Source of the DNA: Vicugna vicugna
Taxonomy: Eukaryota
DNA: 64,000 nucleotides
Direction of reading: 5' to 3'
Assembly (NCBI GenBank): GCA_013265495.1
Contig: MU061814.1
Span: 6,017,684-6,081,683, forward strand
Both the position numbers and the translations under genes were made by a program. Under the pieces are notes generated by a model. That model was not told the DNA's origin. It was given only the letters and a program-made list of their open reading frames with translations, and did no database searches. Below, in pieces: positions 249 to 7,460 of the stretch. Each line of letters opens with the position of its first letter. Position 1 is the stretch's first letter.

Positions 249-7460
<7,212 letters not shown>

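What the first reader, a model, noticed from the sequence alone, without database searches (positions are those of the whole stretch)
7211..7213. Cys at the RTEL1 position equivalent to human R1264 (Hoyeraal-Hreidarsson residue)
The predicted tail CDFH[C][10 protein letters not shown]...FWLEPQ aligns without gaps to human CDFQ[R]CQACWQRHLQ...FWPEPQ. Both have 37 residues from this site to the end, which places it at human 1264. Human R1264H is an established disease allele reported to impair TRF2-dependent t-loop unwinding. Here the codon is TGC, consistent with CpG deamination of CGC, and it puts an extra Cys beside a zinc ligand. All eight C4C4 cysteines remain. This could be a compensated deviation, relaxed constraint, a polymorphism or a sequencing error, with possible relevance to telomere biology in this lineage.
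Basis: partly seen in the sequence, partly recalled or inferred. Interest (0 to 1): 0.7.

Follow-up and report, generated by a model that had tools for sequence, protein, structure and literature searches.

The report
Ordinary, ancient Cys in RTEL1 RING
The cysteine at the RTEL1 position matching human disease residue R1264 is real, but it is the normal, ancient state in camelids, pigs, hippos, whales, a rhino, horseshoe-type bats and a loris, so it is not a peculiarity of this genome.

Summary
Codon 7211-7213 is TGC (Cys). It sits directly before the fifth zinc-ligand cysteine of the RTEL1 C4C4 RING, which is the position of human R1264. Published numbering confirms the register. Contigs from four independent sequencing studies all carry T at 7211, so this is neither an assembly error nor a visible polymorphism.

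Among 73 placental species with a C4C4-bearing RTEL1, 23 have Cys, 48 Arg, one Gln and one Ser. None has His, the human disease allele.
- Cys occurs in Camelus (2 species), Vicugna, warthog, hippo, 13 cetaceans, black rhino, three rhinolophoid bats and slow loris. A frog RTEL1-like fragment has it too.
- Ruminants have Arg (CGC), one CpG transition away from TGC.
- Cys is most parsimoniously ancestral for Cetartiodactyla, with a reversal in ruminants.

Other evidence points to a tolerated substitution:
- All eight ligands are kept.
- The domain is identical between camels and alpaca.
- No column co-varies with the site.
- This genome's TRF2 TRFH is identical to human at 112 of 113 residues checked, including the mapped RTEL1-binding peptide.

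Best reading: an old, tolerated Arg/Cys toggle at a mutable codon. Interest is low. The scan holds only this same note on this stretch.

The parts
7211..7213 (+). TGC codon = Cys at the position of human RTEL1 R1264; last residue of the x4 spacer, directly before zinc ligand 5
   Evidence: register from PMC4339303 numbering; T at 7211 in contigs of 4 independent runs
7140..7243 (+). Penultimate coding exon of RTEL1 (human exon 34 equivalent): zinc ligands 1-6 of the C4C4 RING. The first two bases complete a split codon.
   Evidence: Identical to annotated Vicugna pacos and Camelus RTEL1 isoforms. Aligns to a ruminant-like contig at 91%.
7380..7460 (+). Last coding exon of the C4C4 isoform: zinc ligands 7-8 (CPAC), conserved tail ...QIFWLEPQ, stop TGA
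   Evidence: 100% tblastn match to camelid RTEL1 C-termini
6916..7050 (+). Preceding RTEL1 exon with a PIP-box-like motif QSKISSFL (about 6948-6971). Exon ends are inferred from splice signals.
   Evidence: The motif assignment rests on knowledge of the RTEL1 PIP box (PMC4339303) and was not tested here.
4997..5200 (+). RTEL1 harmonin-homology domain exon (Pfam HHD_RTEL1)
   Evidence: E 1.1e-08, above cut-off
2254..2330 (+). End of the RTEL1 helicase core (Pfam Helicase_C_2)
   Evidence: E 6.2e-10, above cut-off

Best explanation
The codon encodes the normal wild-type residue of camelid RTEL1. The site just before zinc ligand 5 of the C4C4 RING is a moderately variable position that toggles between Arg (CGC) and Cys (TGC) by single transitions at a CpG. 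Cys was already present in the common ancestor of camels and alpacas. It was most probably also present in the ancestor of all Cetartiodactyla, with ruminants reverting to Arg. The eight ligand cysteines should still bind two zinc ions in a RING cross-brace, and the domain should still recruit RTEL1 to TRF2's TRFH domain for t-loop unwinding as in human and mouse. The extra Cys is a tolerated neighbour of a ligand, not a required one. Shown here: the codon, its fixation in the sampled individuals, its phylogenetic spread, retention of all ligands, the RING-like fold of the model, and conservation of the TRF2 peptide. Inferred: unchanged zinc binding and TRF2 binding.
For: Distribution: 23 Cys, 48 Arg, 1 Gln and 1 Ser among 73 placental species. 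Cys is found in Camelus dromedarius and C. bactrianus, Vicugna pacos, Phacochoerus, Hippopotamus, 13 cetaceans, Diceros, Rhinolophus (2 species), Hipposideros and Nycticebus. The frog Rana temporaria RTEL1-like protein reads PFYCC.
Number of changes: a tree built from RTEL1 residues upstream of the RING needs at least 5 changes of the Cys label and 7 overall. Within Cetartiodactyla only the ruminants differ.
Codon: the ruminant-like contig has CGC where the window has TGC.
Variability: the site ranks 14th most variable of 57 domain columns and is not among the invariant or nearly invariant columns.
Constraint: the domain is identical in Camelus and Vicugna, and all 8 ligands plus W, P and Q invariants are kept.
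Reads: four independent runs show T at 7211.
Fold: the AlphaFold2 model (pLDDT 74) matches only RING/U-box domains among its top 50 PDB hits, with TM 0.6-0.7.
Partner: TRF2 TRFH exons of the same genome are identical to human TRF2 at 112 of 113 residues, including [20 protein letters not shown], which I map to Sarek's peptide 106-125 and I124.
Against: No binding, zinc or telomere assay exists for a Cys variant, so tolerance is inferred from fixation in many lineages. R1264H and mouse R1237H abolish TRF2 binding (PMC4339303), so the site can matter. Contigs cannot exclude a rare Arg allele. Parsimony ignores the roughly tenfold higher CpG C>T rate, so three parallel Arg>Cys events in Cetartiodactyla are less unlikely than the step count suggests. 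My mapping of Sarek's TRF2 numbering (542-residue isoform = 500-residue numbering + 42) is an inference, checked only against F120 from memory.
Confidence: 0.8

Rival explanations
1. Functional tuning. Arg versus Cys changes the affinity of the C4C4 RING for TRF2 (or its stability or redox sensitivity), so Cys lineages handle t-loops or set telomere length differently. This would parallel Mus spretus RTEL1 M492K.
For: The neighbouring change R1264H abolishes TRF2 binding and lowers C4C4 abundance (PMC4339303). Natural variation at another HHS residue, 492, resets telomere length in mice (Telomouse papers). The state is stably inherited within large clades.
Against: Cys lineages share no obvious life history: whales, pigs, camels, small bats and a loris. 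Arg lineages include close relatives such as ruminants, horse and galago. There is no co-varying column in the domain, and the TRF2 peptide is unchanged from human. The switch has happened at least five times at a hypermutable codon, which fits near-neutrality.
Confidence: 0.1
2. Compensated deviation. Cys is harmful on a human-like background and is tolerated here only because of a second-site change, for example His/Tyr at the preceding position or changes elsewhere in RTEL1 or TRF2.
For: Every Cys-bearing sequence has His or Tyr at the -1 position (DFHC, DFYC, PFYC), and none has the Gln of apes.
Against: His is also the commonest -1 residue with Arg (47 of 68 sequences have H). About six independent origins on an H/Y background could arise by chance at roughly p = 0.07 (my estimate). 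Sister pairs show no shared second change. TRF2 TRFH is 112/113 identical to human. The disease allele is His, not Cys, and I found no paper reporting R1264C as pathogenic.
Confidence: 0.08
3. Assembly or sequencing error, or a segregating polymorphism of the sequenced animal.
For: Single-base difference at a CpG-derived site.
Against: Contigs from four runs of four studies and two organism labels all carry T at 7211, while differing at other sites. Independent public annotations of Vicugna pacos, Camelus dromedarius and C. bactrianus have the same Cys.
Confidence: 0.01
4. Relaxed constraint or decay of the C4C4 module in camelids.
For: The neighbouring TNFRSF6B is reported as decayed by another first-stage note (not checked here). 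Annotated camelid isoforms also use an alternative acceptor that removes the fourth Cys pair.
Against: All eight ligands and every invariant column are kept. The 57-residue domain is identical between Camelus and Vicugna. Cys-bearing species are on average 91% identical to each other in the domain.
Confidence: 0.01

Closest known systems
Human/mouse RTEL1 C4C4 RING (TRF2-binding motif; Ballew 2013 PMC3757051, Sarek 2015 PMC4339303)
   Same: Same gene and exon structure, same Cx2C-x9-Cx2C-x4-Cx2C-x10-Cx2C spacing, same conserved W, SR-x-CP-x-C and FW-x-EPQ tail, and 37 residues from the site to the end.
   Different: Cys instead of Arg directly before ligand 5. The papers call R1264 'highly conserved' from four species (human, orangutan, cattle, mouse); the wider sample here shows that it is not.
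RTEL1 of Vicugna pacos and Camelus spp. in public annotation (e.g. XP_072800691.1, XP_031289267.2)
   Same: The C4C4 domain and tail are identical to the window's spliced product. Two upstream exons match the alpaca protein at 100%.
   Different: None in the domain. The window is simply this gene in an alpaca-like genome.
Mus spretus RTEL1 M492K / 'Telomouse'
   Same: A natural substitution at a residue whose mutation causes Hoyeraal-Hreidarsson syndrome in humans.
   Different: There, one species differs and a telomere-length effect was demonstrated. Here, a third of placental species share the state and no phenotype is known.
C4C4 RING fingers of NOT4 and TFIIH p44
   Same: Eight-cysteine RING. 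NOT4 chains appear among weak sequence hits (1e4u, 1ur6). The model folds like RING/U-box domains.
   Different: No significant sequence similarity (E above 1). RTEL1's domain is known as a TRF2-binding module, not as an E3 ligase.

Membership tests
RTEL1 orthologue | Helicase C-terminal domain and RTEL1 harmonin-homology domain upstream on the same strand | tested here: met
   Pfam Helicase_C_2 (E 6.2e-10) and HHD_RTEL1 (E 1.1e-08), both above their cut-offs
RTEL1 orthologue | C-terminal exons collinear with, and near-identical to, annotated RTEL1 of close relatives | tested here: met
   tblastn of Vicugna and Camelus RTEL1 against window 1-9000 gives ordered exon hits; the last exon is 100% identical. 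The domain strings are identical.
C4C4 RING finger | Cx2C-x9-Cx2C-x4-Cx2C-x10-Cx2C spacing with all eight cysteines | tested here: met
   consensus quoted from PMC3757051
C4C4 RING finger | RING (cross-brace) fold | tested here: met
   AlphaFold2 model with mean pLDDT 74. All top 50 Foldseek PDB hits are RING or U-box domains, TMq 0.53-0.71, probability 0.97-1.0, but the best E is only 9e-03. Support is therefore moderate.
C4C4 RING finger | Binds two zinc ions | not testable with these tools
   Needs metal analysis or a structure
TRF2-binding C4C4 motif of RTEL1 | Direct, metal-dependent binding to the TRF2 TRFH domain | not testable with these tools
   Indirect evidence only: this genome's TRF2 TRFH exons are 112/113 identical to human TRF2 chains
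Compensated pathogenic deviation | The wild-type residue in another species equals the human pathogenic allele (His at 1264) | tested here: not met
   The residue is Cys. No His occurs among the 73 species.
Lineage-specific substitution | State confined to this genome's lineage | tested here: not met
   Cys occurs in 23 of 73 species from four orders, with at least 5 changes of the Cys label on the tree

The most novel reading that the evidence does not exclude
The Arg/Cys toggle directly before zinc ligand 5 is a recurrent evolutionary dial on RTEL1-TRF2 affinity, or on redox or zinc sensitivity of the RING. On this reading, about a third of placental mammals (all non-ruminant cetartiodactyls, rhinos, rhinolophoid bats, lorises) run t-loop unwinding with a different set point, by analogy with M492K in Mus spretus.
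Probability: 0.08. Interest if true: 0.6.

Novelty: already known. Interest (0 to 1): 0.15.

Why it matters
For this genome it matters little, because the residue is the ordinary state of the gene in camelids and many other mammals. The by-product is modestly useful for interpreting human variants. Arg at RTEL1 1264 is not required across mammals: Cys, Gln and Ser occur as wild type, and in this genome Cys sits beside a TRF2 interface peptide identical to the human one. The pathogenicity of R1264H is therefore more likely specific to His in that context than due to simple loss of Arg. A human R1264C should not be assumed pathogenic by analogy. The published statement that R1264 is 'highly conserved' rests on four species. 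I found no paper noting this.

Tried and rejected
- Direct PDB sequence search with the exon found no solved RTEL1 C4C4 domain, only chance zinc-finger hits and weak NOT4 hits.
- Pfam on the 34-residue exon gave nothing above cut-off.
- The 50%-identity representative search returned few RTEL1 entries. It did supply a full-length horse query and the frog fragment.
- The first two region searches missed pigs and ruminants. A third search on the HHD/PIP region recovered them.
- Sequencing error, visible polymorphism and relaxed constraint were considered and rejected (see rival explanations).
- I looked for a second-site partner inside the domain in four Arg/Cys contrasts, Nycticebus/Otolemur, Diceros/Equus and two cetartiodactyl/ruminant pairs that share the single ruminant reversal; there was no consistent co-change.
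- Pfam TRF on the whole genome found only one TERF2 exon. I located the other TRFH exons by motif scan of 40 kb upstream and confirmed them against PDB chains.
- Paper searches for R1264C, Arg1264Cys and 'compensated pathogenic deviation' with RTEL1 found nothing.
- I did not run complex prediction, because no unspliced reference exists for a contiguous TRF2 TRFH chain.

Full report
**What is in the window**

The + strand of window 1-7460 carries the 3' part of RTEL1.
- Pfam finds the end of the helicase core (Helicase_C_2, about 2254-2330) and the RTEL1 harmonin-homology domain (about 4997-5200), both above their curated cut-offs.
- The penultimate coding exon is 7140-7243. An acceptor AG ends at 7139 and a donor GT starts at 7244. 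Read from 7142 it gives [34 protein letters not shown].
- The last exon, 7380-7460, gives [26 protein letters not shown] and a stop.
- Joined, the two exons fit the C4C4 consensus Cx2C-x9-Cx2C-x4-Cx2C-x10-Cx2C published for human RTEL1 (PMC3757051).
- TGC at 7211-7213 is the fourth residue of the x4 spacer, directly before ligand 5.

**Register with human R1264**

Sarek et al. give the fourth human cysteine pair as C1279/C1282 and place R1264 between the second and third pairs (PMC4339303). Counting back through x10 and Cx2C puts ligand 5 at 1265, so the residue before it is 1264. The window has 37 residues from this codon to the end. So does bonobo RTEL1 (P0075), which reads CDFQRCQACWQRHLQ...FWPEPQ.

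**Is the base real?**

I laid Logan contigs of four runs from four different studies on 6500-8000: one run labelled organism B and three labelled organism A. None of the four is flagged as the possible source. All four cover 7211 and none shows another letter there. They do differ from the window at 6544, 6545, 6569, 6694, 7123, 7371 and 7947, and by a 4-base insertion after 7638. So T at 7211 is not an assembly error and is the major allele in every animal sampled. Contigs cannot exclude a rare allele.

**Which genome**

Two upstream exons match Vicugna pacos RTEL1 at 100%, against 84-97% for Camelus. The window is therefore from an alpaca-like camelid. This is an inference, because organism names are coded.

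**Distribution of the residue**

- The exon alone, searched against the 50%-identity representative library, found RTEL1 fragments with Arg. It also found a full-length horse RTEL1 and a Rana temporaria RTEL1-like fragment with PFYCC.
- Region searches with the horse and dromedary C-termini, and with the dromedary HHD/PIP region, returned named RTEL1 proteins from many mammals. Cluster listing added Camelus bactrianus and further alpaca isoforms.
- A regular-expression survey of the motif, with one protein per species, gives 73 placental species: 23 Cys, 48 Arg, 1 Gln (Perognathus) and 1 Ser (Carlito).
- Cys occurs in Camelus dromedarius, C. bactrianus, Vicugna pacos, Phacochoerus africanus, Hippopotamus amphibius, 13 cetaceans, Diceros bicornis, Rhinolophus ferrumequinum, R. 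sinicus, Hipposideros larvatus and Nycticebus coucang.
- Arg occurs in ruminants (Odocoileus, Muntiacus), Equus, Carnivora, pangolins, most primates, rodents, colugos, elephant and armadillo.
- No species has His, the human disease allele.

**History of the site**

I built a FastTree from RTEL1 residues upstream of the RING, so the trait's own columns are excluded. It recovers the expected mammalian groups. It needs at least 5 changes of the Cys label and 7 changes over all four states.
- Within Cetartiodactyla the order is camelids (Cys), warthog (Cys), then hippo (Cys), ruminants (Arg) and cetaceans (Cys). One change on the ruminant stem therefore suffices if the ancestor had Cys, whereas three are needed if it had Arg.
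- A metagenome contig carries a C4C4 exon that translates like the deer proteins. It has CGC where the window has TGC, within an exon alignment of 91% identity. The two states are thus one transition apart at a CpG.
- CpG C>T changes are fast, so parallel Arg>Cys gains are less improbable than step counts suggest. Even so, the camelid Cys predates the split between camels and alpacas.

**Constraint and compensation**

- In an alignment of 46 C-termini the invariant columns are the eight ligand cysteines plus W, P and Q. The site is not even 90% conserved.
- Among 68 gap-free domains it is the 14th most variable of 57 columns.
- The domain is identical in Camelus and Vicugna, and Cys-bearing species average 91% identity in it. 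Relaxed constraint is therefore not supported.
- Arg/Cys contrasts between relatives (loris/galago, rhino/horse, hippo/deer, warthog/muntjac) share no second change; the last two both reflect the single ruminant reversal.
- All Cys sequences have His or Tyr at the preceding position, but His is also the commonest partner of Arg, so this is weak evidence.

**The partner, TRF2**

I located TERF2 in the same genome and compared three TRFH exons with human TRF2 chains in the PDB. They are 37/37, 32/32 and 43/44 identical.
- Chain 1h6p_A has 203 residues, which I take as TRF2 43-245. This fits F120, which I recall from memory.
- On that basis, Sarek's peptide 106-125 and I124 (542-residue numbering) correspond to residues 64-83 and I82 of the 500-residue numbering, [20 protein letters not shown]. 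This peptide is unchanged in the camelid.
- This numbering map is my inference.

**Fold**

An AlphaFold2 model of the alpaca C-terminus, built from the 46-sequence alignment, has mean pLDDT 74. It shows one helix (residues 31-40) starting just after ligand 5. Its top 50 Foldseek hits in the PDB are all RING or U-box domains, with TM 0.53-0.71 by query length, probability 0.97-1.0 and best E 9e-03. The site is thus the residue just before the central RING helix. Zinc is not modelled, so whether the extra Cys could ever act as a ligand cannot be judged.

**Reading**

The codon is the ordinary wild-type state of camelid RTEL1 and of about a third of sampled placental species. The most likely mechanism is unchanged from human and mouse: eight cysteines hold two zinc ions, and the RING binds TRF2 TRFH to bring RTEL1 to t-loops in S phase (PMC4339303). 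The residue before ligand 5 appears free to be Arg or Cys.

A residual possibility is that the toggle tunes TRF2 binding, as M492K tunes telomere length in Mus spretus. I see no pattern in the distribution that supports this.

One useful consequence follows. Loss of Arg alone is unlikely to explain R1264H. I found no paper on R1264C or on non-conservation of this site.

**Earlier notes of the scan**

The only note on this stretch is the same finding. A neighbouring note reports decay of TNFRSF6B at 8273-9743. I did not test it.

Noticed in passing
window 7380-7549 (+): An AG at 7386-7387 gives an alternative acceptor 8 bases downstream of the main one. Used with the same donor, it yields the tail ...[20 protein letters not shown]..., which lacks the fourth Cys pair and ends at about 7549. 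Annotated Vicugna pacos isoforms X1-X3 and X7 have exactly this tail. Bears and seals show similar frame-shifted tails. A share of RTEL1 may therefore carry only a C4C2 stub.
   Followed up: partly
window 7371: A/T difference 9 bases upstream of the last-exon acceptor, in the polypyrimidine tract. T is present in runs X7 and X8, and both letters in X14. C/T at 7123 (intron) is also seen in X6 and X14, and there is a 4-base CCAG insertion after 7638 in X7 and X8.
   Followed up: no
window 8273-9743: Another first-stage note (s1-262532) reports decay of TNFRSF6B just downstream of RTEL1. In the ruminant-like contig L001, an ORF with a TNFR_c6 hit lies downstream of the RTEL1 C4C4 exon at 2571-2975, so the neighbourhood is conserved there.
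   Followed up: no
proteins P0110, P0093/P0094, P0062/P0068/P0069, P0106/P0107: Other non-ligand cysteines occur inside the RTEL1 C4C4 domain of other mammals: Microtus DFCRC, pangolins WRRCLQ, and lemurs and New World monkeys HA-x-CRKQ. Extra cysteines near ligands are therefore not unusual in this domain.
   Followed up: partly
proteins P0142, P0143, P0207, P0002: Rhinolophoid bats and an unnamed Logan fragment have an 11-residue rather than 10-residue spacer before the fourth Cys pair (…LQANRRTCPAC / …LQASRRMCPAC). This is a one-residue insertion in the last RING loop.
   Followed up: no
L005 8827-9261, L005 9369-9464, L007 92-223 (G000 contig C6437): TERF2 exons 1-3 of this genome. The TRFH part is 112/113 identical to human TRF2. 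The single difference is Val>Ile.
   Followed up: yes
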